Shown here piece after piece: positions 5,252 to 33,600 of a stretch of 64,000 nucleotides of DNA. This DNA is from Convolutriloba macropyga (taxonomy: Eukaryota). Position numbers and translations under genes: made by a program. The notes beneath the pieces are model-generated. The model had not been told where the DNA came from. It searched no databases and saw only the letters and a program-made list of their open reading frames with translations. The DNA lies in the NCBI RefSeq assembly GCF_964194025.1, contig NC_134478.1:43276001-43340000 (forward strand), in the 5' to 3' direction. The stretch's first letter is position 1; each line of letters opens with the position of its first letter.

Positions 5252-5312
5252 GGGGGGGGGGGGGGGTGCAAAATTGCGTGGTGGTGGTGGTGGTGGGGGG
5301 GGGGGGGGGGGG
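5252..5312 (+). repeat. Poly-G/(GGT)n tract, G-quadruplex-prone
   Basis: G15, spacer, (GTG)n, G18. Confidence 0.85.
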
Positions 5313-5399
5313 CAATGAACGGGAAAGATCCAGATTTGCATACAATTGATCTCAAAAAATGCTAAACTCCCGAAAACTTTGCCGCGCCTTTTCACTTAC

Positions 5400-6000
5400 A
5401 TCGTACCTCAAGCGTAGGATAAGTTATGATTGATGACGGGTGTATGTGGTAACTTGTTTTATTGTTAAGCTCGGAAATGCTTTGTTTTTGACTACTGATA
5501 ACCAACCAACCATTTGTTCTTGGTTGCCATGAGTGTTATCGGCGGTTATCGGCTAATTAATTAATGTGGTTGTGAAATGGAGAGCCGAGTGATTATGGCT
5601 AATTTAGTTTTGGTTATCTAACCACAGACTGGAAGAGAGAAAGTTGGTATGGACCGGCTGGCATTTTGATAATAAATCATATCTCATTAATTATTAATTG
5701 GCATTCGAAACGACATCTATCTGTTCTACAGAACAAATTCGCCAATTGTACTTCTAACAGTCGTGTATGTGCAGTAAATACAATATGCGTGCATACATCA
5801 ACGTCTAATCAAAAAAGAGTGAGGCAAAAGAGAACTTTTTGACTTTTTTGTGGCTGAAACGAGCGTTATGAAAAGCGAAAATGAGTTTTGTTCTAACAAT
5901 AAATTTGTACCTTTTTTGTCATCGTGAACTGCAACTGTATGCATCAATACATTGACAGCCGAAGATTCGAACAAAAAAGCCACCAACGAATTAAGACTTA
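5400..6000 (+). promoter_or_regulatory. Putative fz5/8 proximal promoter region
   Basis: Immediately precedes the onset of ATG depletion; non-repetitive; TAATTAATTA-type homeodomain clusters near 5553 and 5686. Confidence 0.4.
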
Positions 6001-6398
6001 GCTGTTATTGATTATTATTTATAACTAATTTATAACTAGCAGAGGTATTAGCTGGTTAACTAGTTAGTAGTGCTGGTAGCAGCATAGTAGTAGAATTTGT
6101 GAAGAAAAAGAGAAGGTGGAGAAAGAACGTATTTTACAATTCTGTGCAAATATTAATTCATATCACTCACTTTCAGCTTAGTTTAATTTATAATCATAAA
6201 CTACAACTATTATTACTTAATAGTTTATTACTACCACTGAGGAGCAACAGAGAGAAAGAGAGAAAAGAGCACCGGCCAATTCTAAACTTGTCTCCAAATT
6301 GTCATAAATACCAAAATTTTGACAATTTCTCAAACTATTGATCAATTTTGAGGAAATTGTCAAATTTTTAGAAAGACAAGGAAAAATCGCTCATTTAA

Positions 6399-6512
6399 AT
6401 GTGTTACATTTTGCGTTTTGTTTCTAGGAATTGCATTATTAACACAAATTGCAAATCGTCTACTATAAAATTGATCACTTTCGAAAATCATTACCAGTAT
6501 TCTTACTTTTGA
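6399..6512 (+). other. uORF1 (37 aa, MCYILRFVSR...)
   Basis: First ATG in the depleted leader; weak context taaATGt; TGA at 6510-6512. Confidence 0.45.
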
Positions 6513-7292
6513 GTCTTGAAATTGGAGGTGTCTGGTTTATTCACGGTGTTTACATTTGTGTACATCTCTTGATTGCGATATTAATTGCCTTGTTTATTGT
6601 GGTACCTGCTGGCGGAGCGTCTTGAAATTAAGACAGCAGAGTTGTTGGAGCCATTAAGAGAAGCAGTTTTGAAAAGGGAGGAACATTTTTGGAAGCATTT
6701 TTGAGCAACTGATAGTCGCATCATCAATTCACGTTTTCTCAATTTCCCTGAGCCGCCATCTTGTCGACATTAATTGGAACTTCGACTACGTTTAGTCGAC
6801 TGAGATTTTTATAGTTGCCAATTATTGCTTCTGTGCGGAGACTATTTAAATTTCAAGCATCTCCGTAGCCCTCAGTTTTCCAACTGTTGAGTTAGTTACT
6901 ACTGTTCGAGACAGGAAGCGTTACGTGAACGAGTGAACGTAAATAAAAACAGACCGGGTTGTGGGGAAGAAAAACAACAAAATCCTTTCCCCGCCTTTTC
7001 TGCATCTTTTTACCGTTATCCACAAAATTACAGTTGCCTCAAATTTCCTTTGCCATCAGGTTTTCAAGCGTACCACGTTGCCAATAGCTATTGAGTTGAG
7101 AAGATACTACTTGAAAAAGTTGCCTGTGAACAGATAAATACTACACCCCTCCTTCTATTTTGTTCTTCCTTGTTTGTTACTATTGCGAAGACGCGCTTGT
7201 ATTATTACCCACAGATTGTTAACTAACCAGGGCTAGTTATTACGTGCACCGTTCATTATAATTCTCGGTTATTTGCTTCGCGTTTACTCTAA

Positions 7293-7334
7293 ATGCTGCT
7301 AGAATTGATGCTGATATATAGCTCCTATCGTTAA
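7293..7334 (+). other. uORF2 (MLLELMLIYSSYR; second in-frame ATG at 7308)
   Basis: Two in-frame ATGs, both with T at -3. Confidence 0.45.
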
Positions 7335-7698
7335 CCATACGTTCATCATTTTGCTGTTAAAATATCCCCGCGCGTTATACTTACTTCTGCTTTAGGGGGA
7401 GAGAAAGAGAAAGCTTTTCCATTTCAACTAGTGGTACTTCATTTTTCCCTCTCTGCCTCGATTCGCTTCTCTTAGCTGCTTTGTACTGAAGAGAGTTGCC
7501 CTCCTAGTCTTTGTAAAACAGCACAGCTTAACACACTGTGGTACTACTGCACAGAAAACAGCACAAAATTATCCTACTATTGCTGTCTTTTGAAAAATAT
7601 TCTCTATTTTGCCTCTATTTTGCATTTAGTGGGAAAATTTCAACATTTTCAGCAGCAGTAGCAGCCGAATACATTATCTTCGCACGCACTAGAGTTTT

Positions 7699-7786
7699 AT
7701 GCTATATGCTACTTACTTTTTGCATATATAACCTTTTCCAATTTTGTGGGGAAAACACAATTTTGAGTAAAAGTAGTGTTGTATAG
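7699..7786 (+). other. Overlapping uORF3 (7699-7731, 10 aa) and uORF4 (7706-7786, 26 aa)
   Basis: tttATGc and tatATGc, weak contexts, different frames. Confidence 0.4.
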
Positions 7787-8229
7787 CTCAATTTTGAATT
7801 TTGTGCTCATTATTTTTATTCCATCCTGCTTTGAGGGAAAATTTTAGAAAATAGAAAAATTTATTCCCAACTTATCTGTCGTGCTGACTCGCTCTGCCTT
7901 ACCTCTCTCCTGTTTACGTGTTTGCTTAGCCTATTGGGAGATTGTCCTATAGCATTCGAGTGCTTTCACCTTTCATTAATTCTCGCACTCTGATTGGCTG
8001 ATAAATTCGATTCAAATTCTCGCAGCGCCTATCAAAAATAGCCGAATAAATTGTATCTTTTAACATTGTAAATTTACACTGTGCGTTTATTTTACTACAC
8101 ACACTGTAAAAGAATTTTAACTTTTACTGGTTGAGAGAAATATCCTATCCTTTCTGTTTTTTAACAGAGCACACGCACACAGTAAAGATTTGGTTTGGCG
8201 TGGAATTATTGGTTGGGAAGCGGGAATAT

Positions 8230-8367
8230 ATGTGTAATATTTGTAATACTTTTCCTGCCTTTTCTATATATCCTCAGAGAAGAGAACAGGCTTGTAGAAA
8301 AGTAGGCGGCGATTGTTATTTCATTTTGAATTTTGCTCCGCCAGTTTTGCTTTGCTTCATATTATAG
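8230..8367 (+). other. uORF5 (45 aa, MCNICNTF...)
   Basis: tatATGt weak context; TAG stop ending 8367. Confidence 0.4.
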
Positions 8368-8442
8368 CAGCTACAGTAGCTAGCTAGTCACTGCTCTCTT
8401 AAATCGCCATAAATTGACGGCCCTTTTCCTCTATAATTCTAA

Positions 8443-8484
8443 ATGCCACTTATTTCTATCCCCACTACTACTACCACCAACTGA
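8443..8484 (+). other. uORF6 (MPLISIPTTTTTN)
   Basis: Last upstream ATG (taaATGc); followed by ~1.2 kb free of ATG up to the main start. Confidence 0.45.
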
Positions 8485-9671
8485 ACCTACACACACACTC
8501 GCAGAAACGCATAAACTACCAGCTAACAGGCATCATTGTTGGAACAACAACGACCTGTCCAAAAACGTTCCTTGTTTTCCTTGTTGGTAAACAAATTTAT
8601 TCATCCTGGTTGCAAGTATTGTTGAACTGCTATAATTACTTGACGAAATACCAAGAATATTTGTCACAAGAGAAAAGTCACCCGCGACTACTGTTCTTTA
8701 TTCAAACACTTTCTGTTGTTCTTACACTTCTCAAATATATTTGGTTACATTTACGAAATAAATTGACATCTTGGGAAAAAATTGATTGTTATTCGCACAT
8801 TGAATATTATTTCCGGTTTTTGTTGTGACACTTAGTGACAAAATTTGCGTTCACATTGATAACCAAATTTGTCGACAAATTTTATAGAATTTCGAGGATC
8901 AATTTTAATTCGGTTTGGCGGAAACGCAAAAATTTGTCACACATTTTGTGAAAGAATTGAAAAACGTCATATTACTCCATTACAATTGTTGAGTTATTTT
9001 ACTACCAGTTTGCTTCTGTTTAACCGATAACAAAACGTTCAGCAATTCGCGTTTAAAACAACTGACGCTTTAGTCAAAAGCTAATTTTCCTCTTTTGTTT
9101 AAATTTTCCGCCTTAGGACGGAGAAATTTACATTATTTCACTTCACTCTCACAGGGAACACAAATAATTACTATTGTTCGCTTTTGTGCTCAAGAATTTA
9201 ATTTGTGACAATTTTTCTAAAGCTCTAGAGTTCTAAAGCTAAAAAAATTGCGTGTGAGAGTTAACAAAACGGCGACTGACTTCCATCGACGGAAACTCAA
9301 AATTTGTTAGCAATATTGCAACCATTGGGTGAAGTATTGTGGAAATTGCTTCACTGTTTTGCCTGATATTTCTCCACTAATTACTGCTCGTTTTGCAAAA
9401 ATCCATATCGCTTTTTGTGAAGAGACTGAGAAAACAAATTCCGCCCCAAAAATTCAATACACATTTGGTCTATTTGCGTCAGTGATTTTACTTAGCTTAA
9501 TTCATTTGCTTAATTCGAGTTGTTTATCAATAGTTTAAGCAAAGAAAATATTGAAAAATTTACTTCCTTTTACAGTTGCTCATATTATACAAAACCAACT
9601 TTGAAAAATCAATTTTTATCTAATTTGTCTGCCGGAAAGTCTGAAAGATTGAAGGAAAATTTAATCACAAA

Positions 9672-11333
9672 ATGTTGACTCGAAAACCAAACTCAAACGT
9701 ATTTTCATTTCTAGTTTCTCTGTTGTTATTTATAACTTCAGTTCGAGCGATTAAAACGAGCGGACAGTGCCAAGAAATCACTGTTCCTATGTGCAAACAA
9801 ATCGGATACAATGCCACTACATTTCCAAACGAGTTGGATCACAACACCCAAAATGAAGCGGGAATGGAAATTCACCAATTTTGGCCACTCGTGGAAATCG
9901 GGTGCTCAGACCAACTCAGATTTTTCCTCTGCTCGAAGTACGTTCCCATTTGCCTGCCGAACTTTTCCAAGACTTTACAGGCTTGTAAGAAAGTTTGTGA
10001 AGTTGCGAGGGCGGGATGCGAACCGGTGATGCAACATTATGGCTTCGAATGGCCGGAACGATTCGATTGTGATAAGCTGATTACGAAAGAAGAGTCGCTG
10101 CTGGAAGAAAACAGACAAAAGAACTTGATGTGCATGCAGGATGACCACCTGGATGACTCAGATCCGGTTCTTCCTCCAACCAAGATCGAAGGGAGCAAAC
10201 CTCCTGGAAACGAAATTCCAGAACCAATTGGCCCAAAACTCGGTCCAGAGTGCTGCTCGTGCAATTCGCCATTTAAGAAATTGACGGGGACCTCGCCCTA
10301 CTACAAGCTCAATGTCACAACTGGATTGATGTCAAACTGTGCGATGTCTTGCAAAAGTCCTCACTTCGATGACAACGAGAGGAAGTTCACCCCAATCTGG
10401 TTGGGAATCTGGTCTTGCCTATGTTTTGTATCAACATCCGTAATGGTGCTCACTTTCCTAATCGATATGTCCAGATTCAAGTACCCAGAACGTCCCATCA
10501 TTTTCCTGTCCGGCTGCTACATGTTCGTTGCAATTGGTTTCATGATCAGACTAGTCGCTGGACACGAAGCGGTTGCATGCAACGATGAAATAATTCGATA
10601 CGATATTAGTGGTCGCCCGCCGTTGTGCATAACCGTGTTCATTCTCACATATTTCTTCAGTATGGCCAGCTCAATTTGGTGGGTAATTCTCTCCCTGACC
10701 TGGTTCCTAGCGGCTGGACTCAAATGGGGCAGCGAGGCAATTGCAAACTACTCATGGTGGTTTCATCTCGTAGGATGGGTTATACCGACAATTCAAACAG
10801 CAGTCGTTATTTTCACCAACAGCGTTGATGGAGATCCGGTATCTGGGATCTGCTATGTTGGCAACCAGAGCATTGAAAACCTTCGATTCTACGTCCTGGG
10901 ACCCCTGATCGTCTATCTTTTCACGGGCACTATGTTTCTGTTGGCTGGCTTCGTATCATTGTTCAAAATCCGACATGTTATCAAGCGTGGAGGAACAAAC
11001 ACGGAGAAATTAGAGAAGTTAATGATGAGAATTGGTGTGTTTTCGTTTTTCTACACAGTTCCCGCAGCTGTAGTCATTGCATGTTACTTCTACGAGCACA
11101 GATATAGAGTAGACTGGGAAAAAAGGGTAACGTGTCCGTGCGTTGGCAGGAATTACCCCACGCCAGAGTACTTTGTCTTTGTTTGCAAATACTTTATGCT
11201 GTTAGTGGTTGGAATCACATCAGGTTTCTGGATCTGGACGAACAAGACCATCAACTCCTGGCTGCAATTCGGATCTAAGATCTTGGGAGGTCGAGGAAAC
11301 AATGTCCCGAAGGTTCCCATGACCCATGTCTAA
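9672..11333 (+). CDS. fzd5/8: Frizzled-5/8 Wnt receptor (uninterrupted CDS, 553 aa)
   Basis: Signal peptide; cysteine-rich domain CQEITVPMCKQIGYN..EAGMEIHQFWPLVEIGCS..FFLCS..C..GFEWP of Fz5/8 type; 7 TM core (FKYPERPIIFLSGCY, YFFSMASSIWWVILSLTWFLAAG, GDPVSGICYVGN, LEKLMMRIGVFS); Dishevelled-binding KTxxxW motif (KTINSW); PDZ-type C-terminus -MTHV, like FZD5 -SHV; start in cacaaaATG context. Confidence 0.97.
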   Translation: MLTRKPNSNVFSFLVSLLLFITSVRAIKTSGQCQEITVPMCKQIGYNATTFPNELDHNTQNEAGMEIHQFWPLVEIGCSDQLRFFLCSKYVPICLPNFSKTLQACKKVCEVARAGCEPVMQHYGFEWPERFDCDKLITKEESLLEENRQKNLMCMQDDHLDDSDPVLPPTKIEGSKPPGNEIPEPIGPKLGPECCSCNSPFKKLTGTSPYYKLNVTTGLMSNCAMSCKSPHFDDNERKFTPIWLGIWSCLCFVSTSVMVLTFLIDMSRFKYPERPIIFLSGCYMFVAIGFMIRLVAGHEAVACNDEIIRYDISGRPPLCITVFILTYFFSMASSIWWVILSLTWFLAAGLKWGSEAIANYSWWFHLVGWVIPTIQTAVVIFTNSVDGDPVSGICYVGNQSIENLRFYVLGPLIVYLFTGTMFLLAGFVSLFKIRHVIKRGGTNTEKLEKLMMRIGVFSFFYTVPAAVVIACYFYEHRYRVDWEKRVTCPCVGRNYPTPEYFVFVCKYFMLLVVGITSGFWIWTNKTINSWLQFGSKILGGRGNNVPKVPMTHV

Positions 11334-12091
11334 TTTGGGACTCTTCAATCGGCAAACAATAAATGCAAATTCAACCCAAACTCAAATGGTGCAAAAAAAC
11401 TGAATCGAATTTTTGTTTTCAAAACAGATTTCAAAACAGAACTTAGAATGAGTTATTCTTTGACACAAATCAGCTCAAAATCTTTGGACAGAATTAGAAA
11501 AGCACTCCAAGCACAGATGGAGAAGTTTGCTACGATGCTCGGAAGCGAACCACGTTGGAATCGAAAGCGATCTTGCTGGAAGATTGTGAAGAAGAAATGA
11601 AAGAAGCGAGCATCGAATTTTGTTAGATTACTGATTTTAATAGAAAACTTGAATCGACTCTTAGTTTGTTATACTAGTTTACTGCTTATTTTTGTTGTTC
11701 CTTCCTTATTTTATCCCTTTTCCATGCCAATTCTTTCTATCTCTTAAACAAACAGGGTTTAATAAACAAACAATAATAGCTTCAGTTTACTAGCTCGGAA
11801 TCATCAAAATAACACGTGATCAAACTTGAACGAACGTGGCCGATCGTGAACGAAGTTATAATTACTAATCAGAAGTTTTATTATTTCAATTCAATTAAAG
11901 ACGGACGAATCCAATCAATCAAATTGGTCGAAACAACTCGACTGGACTTAACCAAATTCTCGAGATACAGGGTACCAAATTATATATCTCAAACTCGCCA
12001 GATCTCCAATATCTGGTGTCAACAAAAACAAACAAAGACTCAAAACTTGACCATTCAATGCTGATTTATAACATATGATGAACTTAATAAA
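11334..12091 (+). terminator. fz5/8 3' UTR with candidate polyadenylation signals
   Basis: AATAAA at 11358, 11761 and 12086; which one is used cannot be determined. Confidence 0.4.
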
Positions 12092-15000
12092 TTAGTCTAT
12101 ATATTAATATAATTCGATGTTAGTGATTGAGAGGATATTTTTATTTTGATTCAATGTCATTTCGTAACTTTCTTTTGCCGACTCTTAACACACATTCTAC
12201 TTTGCCATCGTTAGAAAAAACTGGGATTACGAACTTCCATTTCAAACTTCAATAATTTTGTGTTCCTGCGAATTTGCTGCAAAATATCATCGAGTTGTAT
12301 CATTACATTAATAGAAGCTGCTTTTGAAAAGTTTAACCTGGCACCTATTATGATTTTTTGAAGGCTGCGGCTTAGAATACTGAACAAAGTAATCTTGTAC
12401 TTTTTTATGAACCATTGTTGAAATTATTTTTAACGTGGGTTTGAGCATTTATGTTGTGGCTTCTATGATGTACTGGTTGGGCTGTGGTGAGTGTTAATGA
12501 TAATTATGGAGAACAAGTTGCCGATAGATTGGGGGGTTATATTGGCAACTGTTACAACTTTCAAAGGACTAACTTGTGATGAAATTGATGTTGAGTCTGT
12601 TTCTGCCGATGCTCCTTTTTGGTCCTCCTCCTCCTTTCCTTGCACTGTGCATAGTTAAATTGATCATACTATTTTGCATATTTCATATATTCATTTTATA
12701 TTTTGCTCACTTTCGACAATGAAATTTAAACTTCACAAATTCTCTCTCTTCCTTCTCTACATCTCTCACGCTTTCTTTCTGCTTATACAAAAGAATTTTC
12801 GACAGTGCAAGAAATTGCTCAGTTTCAATACCGGGATCGTGTTTAATTCCCCAAAAAATCAGTAAATCACAAGTTTAAGGATATTAACAAATTTAAGACT
12901 TTCAAGCTTTTTTGAACAAATCATTGTTTCGTACATTCTTAGTATGACACAAATGAACGCTAGGCAAAAACAACTTTTCTTTTTCTATTGATCATTTTAT
13001 AATGCCGTTTATAACATAGCTTGACAATCAAAGTGGTATGAAAGTGTGTGATAACGGGACGACCCGTGAAGTTCCAGTGAATTTTAAATGGCATGTAAAG
13101 TGACGGTTTTACTGAATTTTGAAAAATTTTTATCGACTTCATAAAATTTAGTTGATGGCCATGGTAAAACTTGTTTTCTTTTTTGGAATCCAAGAATTTC
13201 AATTTCCAAATTTTTCAAAGTCTACTTTGCTACTGGACATTTGACCTGAAGGGTTGAACGTATTGTTGGTCAACCCCAGCTACTATAAAATGGTCAAGAA
13301 AAATTTGTCAGATGTTTTTATACAGTACTTAGTTGTTCAGCCGTAATTTGATAGTTGTCTCTGTATTCAAGTTTCGAACTTCTATTCGTTTTGCCTGAAG
13401 TATCCCATTTCAATTTTTGATAGAGCTTCATTCTAGAGACTCATCACTCATTATTGTGGGAATTAGTGAGAGAACGAATGTATTCATTTTTTAGTTTAGA
13501 TTTTCGTACAATTTAGCTTTTGTAGATATTTTTAAAGAAATTTTCGGCCTTTGTTGTCGGTAAAATTATAAGATCATTTAGAACAAACAGATTATACGAA
13601 AAGATTGTTATGCTCTCTCGAGATAAAATTTAAACAAAAATCTTTGTTTTAGGATGCCTGACTTTTCTCGCGATGATTAAGGCCTCTTTTTAGATAATTG
13701 CTGGTGTTAAATAATTTACACATGCGCAAATTTGTAAATATATAAAAAATTGGGTCTTGGCGAAGTTCAAAAATTACCTCTTTGATACTATTCTGCAATG
13801 TCCTGTACCCATATTTTGCCCTTGAGAGGATTGTATTAAGAATCGTTTCTTATATTTCAGGAAATTCGTTTCCTGAGTTTTATTAATAATCCGTAGACAC
13901 TGGTTCGAGACTGATTCGTTCCGTTATCTTCATTTTTACTTTTACAAATATTAAAATTTTGTCCTTTTGAATCAGAAATCTCCGCTTTGACCGAATTTCG
14001 CAATATTGTATCTTTCTCTAATTCCAGTGTAGTTGAATAAAATTCCTGTGAATTATTTCATTTAAGGGGACTTTTATTCTACGGAATGAAGTTTACTGGC
14101 GAGCGTCAGTTTTATTCAACGAAACTGTCACCGTTTAAATCTTGACAGGCTGTTTGTTCGTTTTAAGAGAATCGTGTCCATGAAATATTCCGTAGTTGAC
14201 TGCATTCACTAGAGCCTACACTAGAGTATGTGTGCGATGTATTAGCTATTTCTGTAATCTGAATATGGTTGTGTTGTGCGGATATTACTTCAAATTTTGT
14301 GATGAGCAAAGGTTATGTTGCATTTTAGTATATATTTTGAACTTTATCCATGCGATGAATACGAATGATTTCATCAATGGATTATTTTGTAGATATTTGA
14401 CTTGGTTGAAGTTGCGTTTAGTTGAGTTTGCAAGAGTTATAGAACTTGTTTAACTATAAACTAGTGGAGTTTGTGTGGTGGTGGTGTGGTGTTAGTTGTG
14501 CGTCGATCATAGATAGGCTAGGATTAGCCACACAACTCAGACTTGACGACTCTTTATTTACTCACAAATCACAGCCGGGTTGTCTTAGAACACTCTCTCT
14601 TCAGCACACACCAACTAACACAGTCATGCCTTGGGCAAATTTGAGTTGAGATTGGGACATTGTGCGAATGTTGTGTGCAAATTTGCATATCTTGATTTGC
14701 CAATCCATCAACATAATTGACAGCTAATCAGCACAATTGAGCAAATCTCTAAAGAGATACACTAAATGTCAACTTGCTTCAAATTGATGGTGGTGGCGGT
14801 GGTTGTCATACTGGTGACTTTTGCGATGGTACGAATTATAGCATGTGCTCTGAAATACACCATCTCTAGGACTCCAGGCATCGTTGATCTTTTAAGGAGA
14901 TTAACGGATCTTCACAAAGTGGTTGATGTTTGGGACTATTTTCAGAAATTGAAATGTGTCAACGAGAAAGTGCAAGGAGATAATGTATGAATGATGTTCA

Positions 15001-23280: not shown

Positions 23281-26200
23281 TGAACTGCAAAAACGGATAA
23301 ATTTTTAATCAGCGAGATAATGTCTTTGAGAAGTGTACAATCGACAAGGTTCTTTTCAGAATATAAGTATTAAAAAATATTAAATAGTTAGTGTCTGAGC
23401 TGTTTGTGTTATAATTGTTTCGACATGCTGTGGCTTTTTTATCCCAAAATTGACTACAAAACAGTATGAAAAAGAAAATAAAATGCGTATTGAGTATTCT
23501 GAAATGAAACGGATTCTAAAAAGGCGCCTTTCGTCTGCAATTCTACAATGATACTTCCTTCTTCTGCTTCTGTTTGTTTATTATCCAACCGCCCCTACCC
23601 CACCCCACCCTAAATGTAATAATGCACTTTATTATTCTATTGAATTTATGTGTTTCCTTAAATCTCTTGTTAAGTGGATAAATGTTTGCTCTCATAAAGC
23701 GTTTTGTCTAATCTTATTAGTACAAGTGGCGTCAGTGTGATTGATCATTTTTGTCTCAGTTGGGATCCAAATATGTTTCACCAGACGGTGGCTTGGACAG
23801 GGGGAGTGTTTTATTATGTCTGTCTGTATTTTTTGCATTTTAATGTATAAACAGGACAAAGTCAATTCTAAATTTTTGTAGCTATTTGTATTGTTGAGAA
23901 TAAAAACAATATGACAATGCACCATAACGATCCTTAGGGTCCAAATGTGTATTATTTTTCTTTTCAGATATTGAGTCAGCGATGGTCTGATTGTTACTAC
24001 TTAGAAATTGATGTCAATAAGAATGAGTCTTTTCTTGCTCTAAAAATGAAAACATTTCTACCGCTTATTTGTCCTCTGGGGCTTTTTTATGAACCAATGT
24101 ACATTTTTTTAGCTGGTGGTTGCACGAAAAACGTTGCCAAGTAAAACTTGCGCTCTCCATGATTCAAATGTGCTAGTTTTTGTCTCCAAATGGTGTATCA
24201 GCACCGTTTTTACTACCCTAAGTAATGCACTGGGAATACATTTTCGTTTTTGACGAAAACTGTCGCCAGAAAACAATTCTTGAGGTTATTAATTGTTGTG
24301 TCGCCACCAAATTTCAATTTTTGTTCAGACTTACGAAGCCGGATGCTGATTCTTCTTGTCAAAACAAAATACATGGGGATTAGATAATAGGCAAAACTAG
24401 CGCGAAAACAATCTTTTCTAGCCATTCGACTAAAGCTTTGAGGAAATTAGGCGTATAACAATTGAAAGACTTGAAGGAAGTACTTCAAAATCTACATACA
24501 AGTTTGTAGAGATAACATGAGTTGTTAAGGAACATGTAAGTTTGTAAAATAATGGATTTTGAAAAAATTAACAGGGAAAGAACCGCGAACGTTCTCTCGG
24601 TTTTAATGCAAAGAGCAATGTAATGTATGAAAATGTTTTACATGTTAAAATTAATTAAAATGAAGCAACGGATAGTTAATTTTTTTATAAACATTGAATG
24701 TTGTTAACAAGAATGCGGATTATAACAATTCGTGTGAATCTTTTGTCGTCACCCAAATTCAATTGTCATTCAAATATATGTTCAAATGAGTTTTTGTTTT
24801 GCCCAGTCAAATTTGGAAAACCTATATGCAATACGGTCTGAGTGATATCAGCTGACAGATTGTTGGTCAATCAAGTGAGTTTTTTTGCTTGGTATCCGTC
24901 CTTTTTTATCTATTCAACACGAAGGAACAATATTCCTTCTATTCTTAGACGTTTTTGAACAGTGCTCAAATCAACAGTGTTTGCGAACTCTCTTCCATTT
25001 AAAGCTCACTTTGGTGAATTTGTAGTCATTTTTCCTGTTCTGCTAATTAGAAATTTTTCGCCTGAATTTAATTTTTCATGCAAATCTTTGACACTTGACT
25101 GCTCGATTGGTCAAACTCTGTTCAACGATTGATTAAATTCTCCTCAAGTTAGTGCCCTGCTAGAAATCATGATTGAATGCTGGCCCTGGTTTGTGCAATC
25201 TCTTGTGAGATTATAGAAAACGCTCAGCATCTTTTTGGTCTGAGCAATAACGTTATTTCTTTCCAACAGTTAAGGTATCAATAGATACGAGATGGTATGA
25301 TATATTGATTAACATTCAAGGTTTTTGTAAATCAATATTAGCTTGAACTGCAAAAACGGATAAATTTTTAATCAGCGAGATAATGTCTTTGAGAAGTGTA
25401 CAATCGACAAGGTTCTTTTCAGAATATAAGTATTAAAAAATATTAAATAGTTAGTGTCTGAGCTGTTTGTGTTATAATTGTTTCGACATGCTGTGGCTTT
25501 TTTATCCCAAAATTGACTACAAAACAGTATGAAAAAGAAAATAAAATGCGTATTGAGTATTCTGAAATGAAACGGATTCTAAAAAGGCGCCTTTCGTCTG
25601 CAATTCTACAATGATACTTCCTTCTTCTGCTTCTGTTTGTTTATTATCCAACCGCCCCTACCCCACCCCACCCTAAATGTAATAATGCACTTTATTATTC
25701 TATTGAATTTATGTGTTTCCTTAAATCTCTTGTTAAGTGGATAAATGTTTGCTCTCATAAAGCGTTTTGTCTAATCTTATTAGTACAAGTGGCGTCAGTG
25801 TGATTGATCATTTTTGTCTCAGTTGGGATCCAAATATGTTTCACCAGACGGTGGCTTGGACAGGGGGAGTGTTCTATTATGTCTGTCTGTATTTTTTGAA
25901 TTTTAATGTATTACCAGGACAAAGTCAATTCTAAATTTTTGTAGCTATTTGTATTGTTGAGAATAAAAACAATATGACAATGCACCATAACGATCCTTAG
26001 GGTCCAAATGTGTATTATTTTTCTTTTCAGATATTGAGTCAGCGATGGTCTGATTGTTACTACTTAGAAATTGATGTCAATAAGAATGAGTCTTTTCTTG
26101 CTCTAAAAATGAAAACATTTCTACCGCTTATTTGTCCTCTGGGGCTTTTTTATGAACCAATGTACATTTTTTTAGCTGGTGGTTGCACGAAAAACGTTGC

Positions 26201-27410
26201 CAAGTAAAACTTGCGCTCTCCATGATTCAAATGTGCTAGTTTTTGTCTCCAAATGGTGTATCAGCACCGTTTTTACTACCCTAAGTAATGCACTGGGAAT
26301 ACATTTTCGTTTTTGACGAAAACTGTCGCCAGAAAACAATTCTTGAGGTTATTAATTGTTGTGTCGCCACCAAATTTCAATTTTTGTTCAGACTTACGAA
26401 GCCGGATGCTGATTCTTCTTGTCAAAACAAAATACATGGGCGATTAGATAATAGGCAAAACTAGCGCGAAAACAATCTTTTCTAGCCATTCGACTAAAGC
26501 TTTGAGGAAATTAGGCGTATAACAATTGAAAGACTTGAAGGAAGTACTTCAAAATCTACATACAAGTTTGTAGAGATAACATGAGTTGTTAAGGAACATG
26601 TAAGTTTGTAAAATAATGGATTTTGAAAAAATTAACAGGGAAAGAACCGCGAACGTTCTCTCGGTTTTAATGCAAAGAGCAATGTAATGTATGAAAATGT
26701 TTTACATGTTAAAATTAATTAAAATGAAGCAACGGATAGTTAATTTTTTTTTCAAAACATTGAATGTTGTTAACAAGAATGCGGATTATAACAATTCGTG
26801 TGAATCTTTTGTCGTCACCCAAATTCAATTGTCATTCAAATATATGTTCAAATGAGTTTTTGTTTTGCCCAGTCAAATTTGGAAAACCTATATGCAATAC
26901 GGTCTGAGTGATATCAGCTGACAGATTGTTGGTCAATCAAGTGAGTTTTTTTTGCTTGGTATCCGTCCTTTTTTATCTATTCAACACGAAGGAACAATAT
27001 TCCTTCTATTCTTAGACGTTTTTGAACAGTGCTCAAATCAACAGTGTTTGCGAACTCTCTTCCATTTAAAGCTCACTTTGGTGAATTTGTAGTCATTTTT
27101 CCTGTTCTGCTAATTAGAAATTTTTCGCCTGAATTTAATTTTTCATGCAAATCTTTGACACTTGACTGGTCGATTGGTCAAACTCTGTTCAACGATTGAT
27201 TAAATTCTCCTCAAGTTAGTGCCCTGCTAGAAATCATGATTGAATGCTGGCCCTGGTTTGTGCAATCTCTTGTGAGATTATAGAAAACGCTAAGCATCTT
27301 TTTGGTCTGAGCAATAACGTTATTTCTTTCCAACAGTTAAGGTATCAATAGATACGAGATGGTATGATATATTGATTAACATTCAAGGTTTTTGTAAATT
27401 AATATTAGCT
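23281..27410 (+). repeat. Tandem duplication, 2 x ~2063 bp, near-identical
   Basis: tgaactgcaaaaacgg at 23281 and 25344; identical ORFs at 23947 and 26010; few SNPs/indels. Confidence 0.97.
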
Positions 27411-27544
27411 TTTTCCGTAAATTGCCCGTTGTTTGTTAGTCATAAAGAATTGAAAATGTTTTAACAGAGTTTTTCATTTTCTGAAATTTTCAGTTTTAGT
27501 CTCTTTTTTATAATCAGCGTAATGTGGTATTTGATATTAGGAAA

Positions 27545-27850
27545 GCCTTGCACGGAAACAATCTTTTTTAGCTATTCCATTAAAGCATGGTGGAAATTAA
27601 GCGTATACCAATTAAAACACTTAGAGGAAACACTTCAAAATCTACACGTAAGTATGGGAACTTACACATGGGAACATGATTTGTTAATGAGCCTGTAAGC
27701 TTGTAAAATTATGGATTTTGAAAAAATTTGGGAAAGAACCGCGAACGTTCTGTCGGTTTTAATGCGAAGGGCAATGTAAAGTTTGAAGTTGTTTATTATG
27801 GTAAAGTTAATTAAAATGATGCAATGGATAGTCAATTTGTTTTCTAAAAC
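27545..27850 (+). repeat. Older diverged copy of part of the 2.06-kb unit (~24395-24690)
   Basis: Shared gggaaagaaccgcgaacgttct..cggttttaatgc and flanks. Confidence 0.8.
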
Positions 27851-27855
27851 TTTGA

Positions 27856-30670
27856 TTTTTGGTCCGACCCACTGGTGGGGGCAGGAACTATGTACTCAAG
27901 CGGTTTTTTTTGTGCAGTCAATTTTGGCCGATCGATGTATTCATCATAGAGAGTTGCGAGTGGTATCATAAGAAAGTCCGCCGATCATAGAATATGGAAT
28001 TAAAGAGGCTTTTTGATTTTCGTTTTCACAGGGAGTCATCGAGGTATAAGTTTTTGTCAATAGTAGACGGACTTCTGTTGTTTTTACTCAAATTTTCTGT
28101 ATTTTTGAACAAATTTTAGTCTTTTTTTGCTAATATTTGTTAAAATTGTAAAAAATGTCATTGGTTTTACTTTTAAGGATAGGCTGGCTGATTGGTTTTA
28201 TCCGAGTCTTTTGGTTAACATGTTTGTATTTGAGACTTAAAATGGCTCATGATACGCTTTTTATTTCCAATTTTTTAACTCAACAATTGTACAAAATTCA
28301 TCCTTTAGTTTTGTTTTATTAATATACTTCATTTGCTTATTGATCTATTTTGCAAACATATGGGAAAATAAGTTGTTTTTGTGGATTGTACAGTAACACT
28401 AGGCTAGGTTTGGACTCATCTTTGATTCCTACAATCAATAATCATTCGGATTATATTGAGGCGCGATCTTTTTCAAATTATTTTTGTTTTTTGTTGATTA
28501 CTAACGGGAATAATTTGAAATAAATGCCCAATTGATGATACATCCTAATTTCAACAAAATGAGGTCAAATGATAAAATTCATACTGATTTTTCAGAGAAG
28601 AGCTGATAGGTTTTTAGGTTTTGACATTGTATTTTCGTAAACATTAATTGTTCTTTTGTTTTTCCTTCATTCTTTTTACAGCCTCGTGACCTCGTTTTAT
28701 TAAGCAGAGATGCAATTGGATTCCTAAGGAGCCATAGGTGAACCTAAACAATCATTTCAGTTGTAATCTACTGACTCTTATGACTTTGAATATATTTGTT
28801 TTAACAAAATGTCAGGCAAGTTTTGAAGTTTGCCAAGTTTTATCTTAGTTCTGTCCACATCTAGCATAGTTTCAATAGAAACAGGGCAAAACCTATTCCA
28901 ATTGAAATAAAAGAAATGCTTTTTAATATGGTTTTTTTGTAATAATGGTTTTGGCTTTCCTATTACGAAACTTCTTAAAAGTTTTGTGATCTTTGCATTA
29001 TTGCCTATATTTGAGGTTGTTATTTGTTCCATCTTCAATTTTTGGCATTCAAGACCCTCCAGTTGACATTGAAGGAATGCCTCTAAAGAACATTTTTAAA
29101 GATTTCAGCGAATAACCTTTAGTTTTAACGGCTGCGAAACCGTTCCCTTGCAACATTTTTCCCCCTAATTGTTGGTGTCAACGGCATATTCTTGACAATC
29201 GAAGGCCTTAATTGCATGTACGAATGTTTAAATGAATCTATTTACTGGTTTCAGTTTATAGCTAACGGTTTTTTTTACTTTCTGACAATTGCAAAGAAAT
29301 TTTATTTGTCCCCTTTGCCAGATTTTGCTCTCTTTGTCAACTATTAACTTAGCCTCATTATTGAAAGCTTTCTGTTGATCCCAACAATGTTAATATTTTT
29401 GCTGTTTATGTATTGACTGACGTCTCGAATTGTGAATTTTGCTTCAATAAGAATTACGTGAGTGTTCGATAGTGGTCAATATTTTCGTACTTTTGTCAGT
29501 TTTAAAGGACACTTTACAATAATGACCCAATTAAAATCAAAGGAGACCCAAACAAAAAAACAAAACCAATTTTATTTTAAAATTTTCAATTGTTGTCATT
29601 CAGTTTTAAGATTAGGATATACGCTGTAATTTTAATAAGTTGTTTGTAATTTTGAGTTTATCCGTATTTGTTGTTTTTTTTGTCTTATGCTTCAGTATCA
29701 CTGATAACGAGCACTTCTGTTTTTGTTGTAAGTTGAAAGCCCATGGTTTGTTTGAACTGTTGTAAATTATTTTAAAAAATCGGTGATTTTTTGAGCTTTG
29801 TCACTTTTATCTGTTAATCTCATTATCTAATATGTTTTATCTAATATCACCTTTGCTAATGAATTGGCCTTGTTGGTTTATATTATAATTTAATGTATAC
29901 TAGTGAATTGTATATTTGTTGTAAAATGTAGGAACCAACTAAATAAATTATACTATTTTTTTCTATCTGTCAGTTTTGTAGCTTGGACTCTGTAAAGACA
30001 GGAACTCTCTTCCTCTAGTGAAGCAAATTTTATTGGCATTTCCATAAGAAAATTTTGATTTTTGCATTTGTGCCCATTTCTAATATTTCGTCTCTTTTTA
30101 TTCCCTGCCACATTATCGCTATAAATGGGTGGCCCAATTGGCGTTCAAAAATTCTCAATTGAAAGTATTTAATGTTTTCCACGACTAGCCTATAGTTTTA
30201 GCGGTTGCGATGTCACTTGAAATCACTCATTGATAGTTTAGATATTCGGTTTATGATTATGAAATTCAAGGAAATGTTATTTATCTTTCTTATAAACAAC
30301 CAGTGTCTGGTTCAGGTTTCAGCAGCGAAACATTGAATTTCGATTTTTATAGAGGTTCTAAAATTCAAGCTTAGTTTAACATAAATGATATCAACGACAG
30401 TGATTTTTTTTTATATTTATGATGTTTCCAAAGTTTCAATAATCGGCTCGTTTTAGAAACTATATAACCACTATGGTGTGGGTTGGAGAGAGGGAGGGAT
30501 GAAGGTCTCATCGGCCCGATTATCCAGCATTAGTTTTCAAAGTAGTTCTTTGTATAACGATATGTGAAGTTAAACTTTTCTATCTCTTCATTTGGTGGAC
30601 ATCTAATTCAAAACGTGGATGAGCGGGGTCGGAACATTATGTGCGAACGCACATTGCCGCGCCTCCTTGT
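27856..30670 (+). mobile_element. Non-autonomous Helentron/Helitron2-like element (family B), ~2.8 kb
   Basis: 5' tttttggtccgaccc plus hairpin cccactggtggg; 3' subterminal IR gggtcggaaca (30626-30636), perfect hairpin atgtgcg-aa-cgcacat (30639-30654), end cttgt. Confidence 0.7.
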
Positions 30671-33600
30671 TGTTTTAACAGATGAATCACCAACTGTAAA
30701 ATAATCATGTTGGCCATTCTATAAATTATTTGGATTTATGCGTTCGTATGAAAAATTCAGGCATCTGTAATTTTTACTGTTAGAATGATTTTTTTTCTGT
30801 TGGTTGTCCGAACTCTCAAAATATGTGATGAAACAGCAGATGACCGAGTCGTTTTGCTTGTGTGAATGGGACACAAAAGTGACCTTATTAGTTCAGCTTT
30901 GTAACAAAAACAGTGGTTGTTTGTTTGATTTATTGCCTTGGAACACAATTTGTGGCTATTACAGGGCCAAGTTGTTTTTTCTTTTCATAAACTTTCTGTT
31001 TTCGAAACAGAATTTTGAAAGCTTTTGTCAGGTGTTTTTATCAGTTCGACTTTGGTTTAAAATAAGATATTCTTAGTACTTTTGTTGGACTTATTTTAGC
31101 TGAATTCTGTCAAATAGCTTTCTATCATTTTTGAATCCAACCATTCTCTCTGACGTTAATTAAGGTCAAAGTTGGTATTTTCGAAAGAGAATTTTGAAAG
31201 CTTTTGTCAGGGGTGTTTTTATCAGTTCGACTTTGGTTTAAAATAAGATATTCTGAGTACCTTTTTTGGACTTATTTTAGCTGAATTCTGTCAAATAGCT
31301 TTCTATTATTTTCGAATCCAACCATCCTCTCTGACTTAAGTTAAGGTCAAAATGGGTAAATTAAGGAAAGACTGTTCATACAACGAAATTGATTATAGGC
31401 AAAACTGAATTGATTTTTTTATGATTTCTTGTTTTCAATTTTGTTTGAATATAAACTGCAGCACATAAAGATTACGATGTTTGTGTTTTTGAAGTGAATT
31501 GTTTCTGTTGACAAGAAATAAATGCATGTTAACGTTGAAGGTTGATGATTTCAAAATAGGTTTGCTGTCATTTTTTGTTCACATAAGAGTCTCTCTCGCT
31601 TGAATGCTAAATTTAGGAGCAATTCATTGGTAGAGAGGAAGGTATTTTTTGATTTTTGATTGTTTCCTGTATTATTTTTGAAAATGACAGACCAAATATC
31701 AGTATTTTAAGAATGTCAATGAGACATCACCTTGATCTTCCATCATTGCATCACTCATTGATAGTTTAGATATTCGGTTTATGATTATGAAATTCAAGGA
31801 AATGTTATTTATCTTTCTTATAAACAACCAGTGTCTGGTTCAGGTTTCAGCATTGAAACATTGAATTTCGATTTTTATTATAGAGGTTCTAAAATTCAAG
31901 CTTAGTTTAACATAAATGATATCAACGACAGTGATTTTTTTGATATTTATGATGTTTCCAAAGTTTCAGTAATCGGCTCGTTTTAGAAACTATATAACCA
32001 CTATGGTGTGGGTTGGAGAGAGGGAGGGATGAAGGTCTCATCGGCCCGATTATCCAGCATTAGTTTTCAAAGTAGTTGTTTGTAAAACGATATGTGAAGT
32101 TAAACTTTTCTATCTCTTCATTTGGTAGACAATTAATTCAAAACGTGGATGAGCGGGGTCGGAACATTATGTGCGAACGCACATTGCCGCGCCTCCTTGT
32201 TGTTTTAACAGATGAATCACCAACGGTAAAATAATCATGTTGGCCATTCTATAAATTATTTGGATTTATGCGTTCGTATGAAAAATTCAGGCATCTGTAA
32301 TTTTTACTGTTAGAATGATTTTTTTCTGTTGGTTGTCCGAACTCTCAAAATATGTGATGAAACAGCAGATGACCGAGTCGTTTTGCTTGTGTGAATGGGA
32401 CACAAAAGTGACCTTATTAGTTCAGCTTTGTAACAAAAACAGTGGTTGTTTGTTTGATTTATTGCCTTGGAACACAATTTGTGGCTATTACAGGGCCAAG
32501 TTGTTTTTTCTTTTCATAAACTTTCTGTTTTCGAAACAGAATTTTGAAAGCTTTTGTCAGGTGTTTTTATCAGTTCGACTTTGGTTTAAAATAAGATATT
32601 CTTAGTACTTTTGTTGGACTTATTTTAGCTGAATTCTGTCAAATAGCTTTCTATCATTTTTGAATCCAACCATCCTCTCTGACTTAAGTTAAGGTCAAAA
32701 TGGGTAAATTAAGGAAAGACTGTTCATACAACGAAATTGATTATAGGCAAAACTGAATTGATTTTTTTATGATTTCTTGTTTTCAATTTTGTTTGAATAT
32801 AAACTGCAGCACATAAAGATTACGATGTTTGTGTTTTTGAAGTGAATTGTTTCTGTTGACAAGAAATAAATGCATGTTAACGTTGAAGGTTGATGATTTC
32901 AAAATAGGTTTGCTGTCATTTTTTGTTCACATAAGAGTCTCTCTCGCTTGAATGCTAAATTTGGGAGCAATTCATTGGTAGAGAGGAAGGTATTTTTTGA
33001 TTTTTGATTGTTTCCTGTATTATTTTTGAAAATGACAGACCAAATATCAGTATTTTAAGAATGTCAATGAGACATCACCTTGATCTTCCATCATTGCATC
33101 ACTCATTGATAGTTTAGATATTCGGTTTATGATTATGAAATTCAAGGAAATGTTATTTATCTTTCTTATAAACAACCAGTGTCTGGTTCAGGTTTCAGCA
33201 TTGAAACATTGAATTTCGATTTTTATTATAGAGGTTCTAAAATTCAAGCTTAGTTTAACATAAATGATATCAACGACAGTGATTTTTTTGATATTTATGA
33301 TGTTTCCAAAGTTTCAGTAATCGGCTCGTTTTAGAAACTATATAACCACTATGGTGTGGGTTGGAGAGAGGGAGGGATGAAGGTCTCATCGGCCCGATTA
33401 TCCAGCATTAGTTTTCAAAGTAGTTGTTTGTAAAACGATATGTGAAGTTAAACTTTTCTATCTCTTCATTTGGTAGACAATTAATTCAAAACGTGGATGA
33501 GCGGGGTCGGAACATTATGTGCGAACGCACATTGCCGCGCCTCCTTGTTGTTTTAACAGATGAATCACCAACGGTAAAATAATCATGTTGGCCATTCTAT

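What the first reader, a model, noticed from the sequence alone, without database searches (positions are those of the whole stretch)
5942..9671. Giant (~3.7 kb) AUG-purged 5' leader on a Wnt receptor mRNA
Seen: by manual count only 7 sense ATGs in 3730 bp (6399, 7293, 7308, 7699, 7706, 8230, 8443) and none in 8446-9671, versus 14 in the 541 bp just upstream. The antisense triplet CAT stays frequent, so the effect is strand-specific. The region lacks the repeats that fill the rest of the window. Known: scanned 5' UTRs are selected against upstream AUGs, while introns and promoters are not; typical animal 5' UTRs are a few hundred nt. Inference: a continuous exonic leader over twice the CDS length, with a TSS near 5950-6050, implying a dedicated translational-control platform. 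I cannot tell whether such leader gigantism is already reported for this lineage.
Basis: partly seen in the sequence, partly recalled or inferred. Interest (0 to 1): 0.9.

Follow-up and report, generated by a model that had tools for sequence, protein, structure and literature searches.

The report
Giant AUG-free leader on acoel Frizzled-5/8
The Frizzled-5/8 Wnt-receptor gene of the acoel worm Convolutriloba macropyga sits behind about 3.6 kb of sense-strand sequence almost cleared of ATG, a pattern kept in at least four other acoels while the sequence itself diverged, so it is very probably an unusually long 5' untranslated leader that ribosomes must scan from end to end.

Summary
Window 5942-9671 holds 7 sense ATGs against 54.6±5.8 in dinucleotide shuffles, while CAT is normal (58 vs 62). 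ATG is the only outlier among the 64 trinucleotides. The desert ends at the start codon of an intronless Frizzled-5/8 ORF (9672-11333).

The genome is Convolutriloba macropyga, an acoel, chromosome 11. Orthologous loci in Symsagittifera roscoffensis and three unnamed acoels carry the same strand-specific desert of 2.7-4.25 kb (ATG observed/expected 0.13-0.17). Only one block of about 45-90 nt aligns across all five. The 3' UTRs of the same genes are not depleted (o/e 0.85). Fzd5/8 loci of a hemichordate, an annelid and a nemertean have no multi-kb desert.

Of the 27 surviving uAUGs, 24 have a pyrimidine at -3, and all six main AUGs have a purine there.

A 6.56-kb contig from a relative begins about 50 nt after a conserved TATA box, ends at a conserved 3' terminal block, and is collinear with genomic DNA. 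It therefore looks like a full-length unspliced mRNA.

Verdict: a conserved, scanned 5' leader of about 3.6 kb. No direct RNA evidence exists for this species, and any regulatory role is untested. It is a new extreme variant of a known kind.

The parts
5673..5738 (+). Conserved block upstream of the desert, a candidate promoter-proximal element. It contains TAATTA-type and GATA-type motifs.
   Evidence: 76% identity over 66 nt with S. roscoffensis L001 7008-7072 (L011 7019-7083). In both species it lies about 200-300 nt upstream of the point where ATGs disappear.
6018..6036 (+). Two TATA-like elements (TTTATAAC at 6018-6025 and 6029-6036). The predicted TSS is about 6040-6070.
   Evidence: Read directly from the sequence. 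A weak alignment places these opposite the TATATAC box of L009/L010, which lies 49-51 nt before the first base of contig L002. The ATG change point at 5942 puts the 5' end within roughly 150 nt downstream. This part is inferred.
5942..9671 (+). Sense-strand ATG desert, read as the 5' untranslated leader of fzd5/8. The transcribed part is probably about 6055-9671, or 3.6 kb.
   Evidence: 7 ATGs against 54.6±5.8 expected, with CAT normal. The change point is, and observed/expected is 0.13.
6399..8445 (+). The seven surviving uAUGs (6399, 7293, 7308, 7699, 7706, 8230, 8443). All have T at -3 and none has G or A at +4. Their uORFs run 8-45 codons and all end more than 1.1 kb before the main AUG.
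7497..7538 (+). Conserved leader block shared by C. macropyga and S. roscoffensis.
   Evidence: 91% identity over 43 nt with L001 8311-8353.
7926..7999 (+). Conserved leader block shared by C. macropyga and S. roscoffensis.
   Evidence: 75% identity over 77 nt.
8296..8447 (+). The most deeply conserved leader element. The cores 8301-8343 and 8396-8422 are the only part of the leader that aligns in all five acoel species.
   Evidence: No convincing compensatory base pairing was found; the GGCGG/CCGCC stem is broken in L002 and L009.
9153..9187 (+). Conserved leader block shared by C. macropyga and S. roscoffensis.
   Evidence: 83% identity over 35 nt.
9560..9575 (+). Acceptor-like polypyrimidine tract plus CAG, 97 nt before the AUG. 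It may be an optional cis- or trans-splice site.
   Evidence: It is one of five such sites in the leader. A similar site lies at -70 to -102 in four of five species but is missing at the homologous place in L010. Whether it is used is unknown.
9672..11333 (+). Intronless Frizzled-5/8 coding sequence of 553 aa. The start context is cacaaaATGt, with A at -3.
   Evidence: Pfam Fz 1.5e-30 and Frizzled 1.3e-120. Best named hits are Fzd5/8. It groups with Hofstenia and three other acoel proteins with support 0.998.
11334..12743 (+). Predicted 3' UTR with normal ATG density, which serves as an internal control.
   Evidence: 23 ATGs against 28.7 expected. The 3' end is inferred from the conserved terminal block.
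12635..12741 (+). Deeply conserved 3'-terminal element. Conservation stops at TTCACAA-TT in all five species, which is where contig L002 ends.
   Evidence: 90% identity over 107 nt with S. roscoffensis, and it also aligns to L002, L009 and L010.

Best explanation
Window 5942-9671 is the 5' untranslated leader of the intronless Frizzled-5/8 mRNA of the acoel Convolutriloba macropyga. It is probably transcribed from about 6055.

The proposed mechanism is as follows. Transcription starts shortly after TATA-like elements at 6018-6036. The roughly 3.6-kb leader stays in the mature mRNA as one essentially unspliced exon. 40S subunits that load at the 5' end must scan all of it to reach the AUG at 9672. 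Selection has therefore removed upstream AUGs along the whole track. It tolerates only a few, in poor contexts (pyrimidine at -3) or heading very short uORFs, which allow leaky scanning or reinitiation.

What is shown:
- The depletion is ATG-specific and strand-specific.
- It ends at the start codon and is absent from the 3' UTR.
- It is conserved in five acoels despite sequence turnover.
- Surviving uAUGs have weak contexts.

What is inferred:
- The exact TSS.
- That the leader is a single exon in this species.
- That translation depends on the 5' end.

What is speculative: that the leader is kept because it carries control elements. Candidates are the conserved block at 8301-8422 and the sense-only YTGCCT motif.
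For: 1. ATG count is 7 against 54.6±5.8 in shuffles, with CAT 58 against 62. ATG is the unique outlier among trinucleotides.

2. The ATG density change point is at 5942, and the desert ends exactly at the Fzd5/8 AUG.

3. Orthologous acoel loci show the same pattern, with CAT as expected everywhere. Using TSS estimates: S. roscoffensis 5 ATGs vs 36 expected over 2.7 kb; L009 9 vs 52 over 4.07 kb; L010 7 vs 46 over 4.25 kb; L002 8 vs 49 over 3.77 kb. The total is 36 vs 236.

4. Only one block of about 45-90 nt aligns across the deeper split. The constraint is therefore on the absence of ATG, not on the sequence.

5. The 3' UTRs of the same mRNAs have observed/expected 0.85, which argues against a transcription-linked mutational bias.

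6. Only 3 of 27 residual uAUGs have a purine at -3 (binomial p=1.8e-4 against 0.45). Two of those three head 2-3 codon uORFs and one heads a 51-codon uORF. All 7 in the window have T at -3. The six main AUGs all have a purine at -3.

7. Fzd5/8 loci of Ptychodera, Owenia and Tubulanus lack a multi-kb desert.

8. Contig L002 starts 49-51 nt after a TATATAC box conserved in genomic L009 and L010. It ends 2 nt after the last conserved base of a 3' block shared by five species. It is collinear with genomic L009, where the largest extra stretch is 122 nt. It therefore behaves like a full-length 6.56-kb mRNA with a 3765-nt unspliced leader.

9. Depletion is almost as strong distally (2.3 ATG/kb) as proximally (1.1 ATG/kb) against a background of about 13-18/kb. 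This fits one distal start site.
Against: - No RNA data for C. macropyga could be consulted.
- The RNA origin of L002 is inferred only from where its two ends fall. Its SRA metadata could not be checked.
- Acoels use SL trans-splicing (30% of genes in S. roscoffensis, PMC9911081). An acceptor-like site sits at -70 to -102 in four of five species, so some or many transcripts may be trimmed.
- The TATA and TSS assignment in the window rests on a weak alignment.
- The leader shows no unusual RNA folding (mean z -0.44) and no Rfam hit. Nothing positive therefore points to a structured control element.
- Whether such leaders are gene-specific or common in acoel genomes was not testable here.
Confidence: 0.78

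Rival explanations
1. The 3.7 kb is a zone of several alternative promoters or start sites, with the conserved blocks acting as internal promoters or enhancers. Most mRNAs then carry much shorter leaders, and only a minority isoform includes the distal part. The desert would be the union of many ordinary leaders, a stretched version of the ATG-desert logic for dispersed promoters.
For: Collinear conserved non-coding blocks lie inside the region. Residual uAUG density is about twice as high distally as proximally, 2.3 vs 1.1 per kb. The ATG-desert concept for multi-TSS promoters exists in the literature (PMC5580651, PMC2672154).
Against: Distal depletion is still about 6-8 fold, so the longest isoform must matter to fitness in every species. 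The upstream boundary is sharp and is associated with TATA-like boxes. L002 looks like one continuous transcript reaching the far boundary. Published ATG deserts are reported around TSSs, about 1 kb on either side, and are typical of TATA-less promoters.
Confidence: 0.12
2. Most of the region is an outron or 5' intron removed by SL trans-splicing or cis-splicing at the acceptor-like site about 97 nt before the AUG. The purge is then maintained only because a fraction of unprocessed or alternatively processed transcripts is translated. This could work as a splice-controlled switch between a short efficient leader and a long one.
For: An acceptor-like polypyrimidine-CAG lies at -70 to -102 in C. 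macropyga, S. roscoffensis, L002 and L009. SL trans-splicing is established in acoels (PMC9911081) and was noted for this genome by earlier scan notes. Strong donor-like GTRAGT sites are absent from three of the five leaders.
Against: Discarded outrons should accumulate AUGs freely; removal of such elements is the proposed '5' UTR sanitization' role of trans-splicing (PMC3795323). Here AUGs are purged over the whole length. The site is not conserved at the homologous position in L010 and does not align between the two closest species. Five to eight such sites occur per leader by composition alone. L002 runs unspliced through its own -84 site.
Confidence: 0.08
3. The cause is not translational: chance, a mutational or compositional bias, avoidance of a DNA motif, or a constraint on the opposite strand.
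For: The leader is somewhat pyrimidine-rich with C>G. GAT is also lowish, at observed/expected 0.52.
Against: The z-score is about -8 and no shuffle fell below 36 ATGs. Only ATG is strongly depleted. The 3' UTR of the same transcript is normal. The desert ends exactly at the start codon in five species. Leftover ATGs are biased to weak initiation contexts, which no DNA-level cause predicts.
Confidence: 0.02

Closest known systems
Ordinary uAUG-depleted 5' UTRs of cap-scanned eukaryotic mRNAs (selection against upstream AUGs; Kozak context rules; leaky scanning). From general knowledge.
   Same: The depletion is sense-strand and ATG-specific and stops at the start codon. Leftover uAUGs are in weak context or head short uORFs. 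The 3' UTR is unaffected.
   Different: Scale and depth differ. The leader is about 3.6 kb (2.7-4.25 kb in relatives), where typical animal leaders are a few hundred nt. Depletion is about 7-fold and is kept across deep acoel divergence while the sequence itself turned over. I found no paper describing such a leader.
ATG deserts around dispersed, mostly TATA-less promoters (Lee et al. 2005, as summarised in PMC5580651 and PMC2672154)
   Same: ATG is scarce in a region near the start of a gene, and the explanation offered is that one protein is still made whatever the start site.
   Different: Those deserts are reported about 1 kb on both sides of the TSS and are typical of TATA-less promoters. 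Here the desert lies wholly downstream of TATA-like boxes, is 3-4 kb long, AT-rich and strictly strand-specific, and has a sharp upstream edge.
Long leaders of developmental-gene mRNAs thought to use internal ribosome entry or shunting (for example Antennapedia/Ubx, some Hox genes, plant pararetrovirus leaders). From general knowledge, not tested against those sequences.
   Same: A developmental regulator carries an unusually long leader.
   Different: Those leaders tolerate many uAUGs because ribosomes bypass them. Here the whole track is purged, which argues for linear scanning. There is no Rfam IRES hit and no excess folding.
Outrons of SL trans-spliced genes and the '5' UTR sanitization' idea (PMC3795323)
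   Same: The lineage has SL trans-splicing, and an acceptor-like site lies about 100 nt before the AUG.
   Different: Sanitization predicts that the discarded part can carry AUGs. This region is purged instead, so it must reach the ribosome in a functionally important share of transcripts.

Membership tests
Scanned, uAUG-depleted 5' UTR | Sense-strand ATG depletion confined to the stretch between the mRNA 5' end and the start codon | tested here: met
   7 vs 54.6 expected with CAT normal. The change point is at 5942 and the desert ends at the AUG at 9672.
Scanned, uAUG-depleted 5' UTR | Depletion absent from other parts of the same transcript (3' UTR) | tested here: met
   3' UTR observed/expected is 0.85 across five species, against 0.15 in the leaders.
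Scanned, uAUG-depleted 5' UTR | Residual uAUGs biased to weak initiation context or short uORFs, with the main AUG in a good context | tested here: met
   3 of 27 uAUGs have a purine at -3, against 6 of 6 main AUGs. All window uAUGs have T at -3.
Scanned, uAUG-depleted 5' UTR | The region is transcribed and retained in the mature mRNA, contiguous with the CDS | tested here: inconclusive
   There is no RNA data for this species. In a relative, contig L002 has both ends at transcript-like landmarks and is collinear with genomic DNA, but its library type is unverified.
Scanned, uAUG-depleted 5' UTR | A promoter or TSS at the upstream edge | tested here: inconclusive
   TATA-like elements lie at 6018-6036. 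A conserved TATATAC box lies 49-51 nt before the L002 start in L009/L010. The alignment to the window is weak.
ATG-desert promoter class (Lee et al. 2005) | ATG depletion on both sides of the TSS (about ±1 kb), typically in TATA-less promoters with dispersed start sites | tested here: not met
   ATG is above average just upstream of the boundary (14 in 541 nt). The desert is one-sided, 3-4 kb long, strand-specific and follows TATA-like boxes.
SL trans-splicing outron | A conserved trans-splice acceptor shortly before the AUG | tested here: inconclusive
   An acceptor-like site lies at -70 to -102 in four of five species and is absent in L010. Five to eight such sites occur per leader.
SL trans-splicing outron | The discarded segment is free of translational constraint, so AUGs are at background level | tested here: not met
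   ATG observed/expected is 0.13-0.17 over the whole segment.
IRES or shunt-type long leader | Many uAUGs tolerated; structured entry element | tested here: not met
   uAUGs are purged. There are no Rfam matches at gathering score, and mean fold z is -0.44.
Frizzled 5/8 receptor (the gene served by the leader) | N-terminal Fz cysteine-rich domain plus Frizzled 7TM region; orthology to Fzd5/8 | tested here: met
   Pfam Fz 1.5e-30 and Frizzled 1.3e-120. Top named hits are Fzd5/Fzd8. There is an acoel clade with Hofstenia. The S. roscoffensis orthologue is named frizzled-5-like in RefSeq.

The most novel reading that the evidence does not exclude
Acoel fzd5/8 mRNAs are obligatorily translated by 5'-end-dependent scanning across 3-4 kb. 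That would be the longest naturally maintained AUG-free scanning track described. It has been kept since before the split of Convolutriloba/Symsagittifera from the L002/L009/L010 lineage, in animals that could trim it by spliced-leader trans-splicing.

On this reading the leader is retained because it is an RNA-level control platform. Candidate elements are the deeply conserved block at 8301-8422, the sense-only YUGCCU motif, and a UAUUUCAU core shared with the conserved 3' terminal element. It may also be one example of a wider class of giant purged leaders on non-trans-spliced developmental genes in acoels.
Probability: 0.3. Interest if true: 0.8.

Novelty: new variant of a known kind. Interest (0 to 1): 0.66.

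Why it matters
Every random ATG gained in a leader is a potential hazard, so leader length is thought to be limited by this mutational load. A leader of 3-4 kb kept about 7-fold depleted of ATG in five species, while almost all of its sequence changed, means two things. Selection is acting on thousands of individual sites. Ribosomes really do traverse the whole stretch in vivo.

That gives a natural test case for three questions:
- How far scanning can go.
- Why a lineage with trans-splicing keeps a long leader on a key axis-patterning receptor.
- Whether ATG deserts can be used to annotate transcript starts in unannotated genomes. This genome has no published annotation yet.

If similar leaders mark other developmental genes in acoels, it would point to a lineage-wide layer of translational control.

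Tried and rejected
- Rfam at gathering score over the whole window, and at E≤1 over 5500-11600, gave only sub-threshold chance hits.
- Sliding 150-nt folding z-scores showed the leader neither unusually structured nor unusually open.
- The S. roscoffensis spliced leader from PMC9911081 has no copy in the window or in any locus, and L002 does not begin with it. The first fuzzy search timed out.
- A metagenome scan with the protein found nothing.
- Looking up SRR19329409, ERZ25071366 and 3300060324 in papers, and in the supplements of the acoel phylogenomics paper, found nothing. The library type of L002 stays unverified.
- L004 vs L005 was meant to give within-species polymorphism, but they are the same sequence apart from two gaps.
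- A stem in the conserved leader block (GGCGG/CCGCC) is broken in L002 and L009 without compensation, so I do not claim an RNA structure.
- A miR-124-type seed match (TGCCTT) is not enriched, at 7 vs 4.7.
- Whether other genes have such leaders could not be tested. The window and all fetched flanks contain no other host gene, and I had no way to fetch other genes of this genome.
- The Lee et al. 2005 paper itself is not held, so I used secondary descriptions.
Full report
**Observation.** Window 5942-9671 (3730 nt) has sense ATGs only at 6399, 7293, 7308, 7699, 7706, 8230 and 8443, and 58 CATs. The 541 nt upstream have 14 ATGs. In 2000 dinucleotide-preserving shuffles of the region ATG averages 54.6 (sd 5.8, minimum 36) and CAT 62.1. 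Under a first-order Markov expectation ATG has observed/expected 0.13 and is the single strong outlier of the 64 trinucleotides; the next is GAT at 0.52. In 1-kb bins the four bins from 6001 to 10000 have 1, 4, 2 and 5 ATGs. Every other bin of the window has 8-28. The three longest sense-strand ATG gaps of the window are all inside the region. A two-rate likelihood change point falls at 5942.

**The gene and the organism.** The desert ends at the first codon of an uninterrupted ORF (9672-11333, 553 aa). It has an Fz cysteine-rich domain and a Frizzled 7TM region, and its best named relatives are Fzd5/Fzd8. The exact protein is encoded on OZ077309.1 of GCA_964194025.3. That is chromosome 11 of the acoel Convolutriloba macropyga (PMC13650328). 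The genome note says annotation is still to come. In a tree of the 120 best hits the window protein groups with three unnamed proteins and then with Hofstenia miamia, with support 0.998. The close relatives are therefore acoels.

**Comparative test.** I fetched the orthologous loci.
- L001, L011 and L012 are Symsagittifera roscoffensis. L001 is 99.4% identical to L011, and the RefSeq name is frizzled-5-like.
- L002 is a 6562-nt Logan contig from SRR19329409.
- L009 and L010 are genomic ENA contigs of two species close to L002.
- L003 is a short JGI contig.

Every one shows the same one-strand desert directly upstream of the start codon. Change points lie at -2990 (S. roscoffensis), -3795 (L009) and -3980 (L010); L002 runs off its contig. 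Using the TSS estimates described below, ATG observed/expected is:

| Species or locus | ATG o/e |
|---|---|
| C. macropyga | 0.13 |
| S. roscoffensis | 0.14 |
| L002 | 0.16 |
| L009 | 0.17 |
| L010 | 0.15 |

The total is 36 ATGs against 236 expected, while CAT is as expected in all five. The sequence itself is not conserved. C. macropyga and S. roscoffensis share five short collinear blocks. Across the deeper split only one block of about 45-90 nt (window 8296-8343 plus 8396-8422) can be aligned. What is conserved is therefore the absence of ATG, not the sequence.

Fzd5/8 loci of Ptychodera flava, Owenia fusiformis and Tubulanus polymorphus show no multi-kb desert. Ptychodera has an ATG-poor zone of about 350-500 nt, as expected for an ordinary leader.

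**Is the cause translational?** Three results say yes.
- The predicted 3' UTRs of the same genes have normal ATG density (90 vs 106 expected, o/e 0.85). A transcription-linked mutation bias is therefore not the cause.
- The surviving uAUGs are not a random sample. All seven in the window have T at -3 and neither G nor A at +4, as an earlier scan note also said (s1-254636). Over six loci only 3 of 27 have a purine at -3 (binomial p 1.8e-4 against a purine share of 0.45). Two of those three head uORFs of 2-3 codons and one heads a 51-codon uORF. All six main AUGs have a purine at -3 within an AAATG-type context.
- All uORFs end long before the main AUG.

This is the signature expected if 40S subunits scan the whole stretch and must not be captured on the way. 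It argues against internal entry or shunting, which would leave bypassed AUGs unselected.

**Transcript ends.** L002 behaves like a full-length mRNA contig.
- Its first base lies 49-51 nt downstream of a TATATAC box that is conserved, with the surrounding 50 nt, in genomic L009 and L010.
- Its last base lies 2 nt beyond the end of a roughly 90-nt block conserved in all five species. After that block the four genomic sequences lose all similarity.
- Over the whole leader L002 is collinear with genomic L009. The largest extra stretch in L009 is 122 nt, inside a diverged segment.

If L002 is RNA-derived, that species makes a 6.56-kb mRNA with an unspliced 3765-nt leader. I could not verify the library type, so this step is inference from two coincident landmarks.

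By homology the window's mRNA would end near 12743, since the conserved block is at 12635-12741. It would start near 6040-6070, after TATA-like TTTATAAC elements at 6018-6025 and 6029-6036 (weak alignment). That gives a 5' UTR of about 3.6 kb, a CDS of 1.66 kb and a 3' UTR of about 1.4 kb. A block conserved with S. roscoffensis (5673-5738) lies 200-300 nt upstream of the desert edge in both species and is a candidate promoter-proximal element.

**One start or many; spliced or not.** Residual uAUG density is 1.1/kb in the proximal 1.1 kb and 2.3/kb further out, against a background of roughly 13-18/kb. Selection is thus nearly as strong at the far end, which favours one distal start over a spread of internal starts.

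Acoels use spliced-leader trans-splicing: 30.2% of S. roscoffensis genes, with the leader sequence given in PMC9911081. Earlier scan notes report it for this genome. An acceptor-like site lies 97 nt before the AUG (9560-9575). Similar sites lie at -70, -84 and -102 in three relatives, but L010 lacks it at the homologous place, and it does not align between the two closest species. Five to eight such sites occur per leader.

Occasional trimming cannot be excluded. Routine trimming, however, would remove the reason for the purge. The '5' UTR sanitization' idea holds that trans-splicing removes such elements with the outron (PMC3795323). I rate this rival at 0.08 and the multi-start rival at 0.12.

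**What the leader might do.** Nothing here shows a function beyond being traversed. Rfam finds nothing, and folding z-scores are unremarkable. Two leads remain.
- The deeply conserved block at 8301-8422 could be a DNA enhancer or an RNA element. No compensatory pairing supports a structure.
- The sense-only motif YTGCCT is enriched in the three leaders tested. TTGCCT occurs 17 times against 4.8±2.0 in shuffles, and TTGCCTG 9 times against 0.9, while the reverse complement of TTGCCT occurs once.

The claim of a 'dedicated translational-control platform' is therefore open.

**Comparison with the known.** Depletion of uAUGs in scanned leaders is textbook knowledge. What is unusual is the length (2.7-4.25 kb), the depth (about 7-fold) and the conservation across acoels.

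Published 'ATG deserts' concern dispersed, mostly TATA-less promoters and about 1 kb on both sides of the TSS. This case is one-sided, strand-specific, AT-rich and follows TATA-like boxes, so it does not belong to that class. Full-text searches for ATG or AUG deserts, AUG-free leaders, and acoel frizzled UTRs found no prior description.

I rate it a new variant of a known kind.

Noticed in passing
window 12635-12741; L011 12461-12563; L002 6472-6562; L009 about 8680-8769; L010 about 12690-12773: A 3'-terminal element of about 90 nt in the fzd5/8 mRNA is conserved in all five acoels (90% between C. macropyga and S. roscoffensis). Conservation stops abruptly at TTCACAA-TT. Its core TATTTCATATATTC shares TATTTCAT with the deeply conserved leader block at 8301-8343.
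   Followed up: partly
window leader; L001 7320-10000; L002 1-3765: The sense-strand motif YTGCCT is enriched. TTGCCT occurs 17 times against 4.8±2.0 in shuffles, and TTGCCTG 9 times against 0.9. The reverse complement of TTGCCT occurs once. This could be an RNA-level motif or a composition effect.
   Followed up: partly
L002 249, 631, 934: Three of the eight uAUGs in L002 are start-stop elements, meaning ATG directly followed by a stop. All three lie in the first 1 kb of the leader.
   Followed up: no
L002 54-125; L009 about 1960; L010 about 5800: A uAUG about 54 nt from the predicted 5' end (cattaATGyTT) is conserved in L002, L009 and L010. The length differences between L002 and L009 within it are multiples of three, so it may be a conserved uORF.
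   Followed up: no
L001 9294 / L011 -701 vs L012: In S. roscoffensis the uAUG with the longest uORF (66 codons, C at -3) is present in two assemblies and absent in a third. It is therefore polymorphic.
   Followed up: no
L001 9995-10003: The S. roscoffensis gene call used for L001 starts 6 nt downstream of an in-frame ATG in good context. RefSeq's 558-aa protein uses the upstream one.
   Followed up: yes
window 46699-49827: A 1042-aa ORF has a reverse-transcriptase domain (RVT_1, 7.5e-17), so it is a retrotransposon. An earlier scan note calls it CRE-like.
   Followed up: partly
window 24000-34000 and 58000-61000: These stretches are almost fully covered by intra-window repeats. By contrast 4-18 kb, which includes the whole fzd5/8 gene, is unique within the window.
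   Followed up: no
window 6242-6392: A local inverted repeat built on ttgacaatttc ... gaaattgtcaa-type arms gives fold z of -2.2 on the plus strand and -3.7 on the minus strand. AATTTGTCA/TGACAAATT-like words also seemed, by eye, to recur in 8780-9320.
   Followed up: no
window 5300-5313: A run of at least 13 G lies about 640 nt upstream of the desert edge.
   Followed up: no
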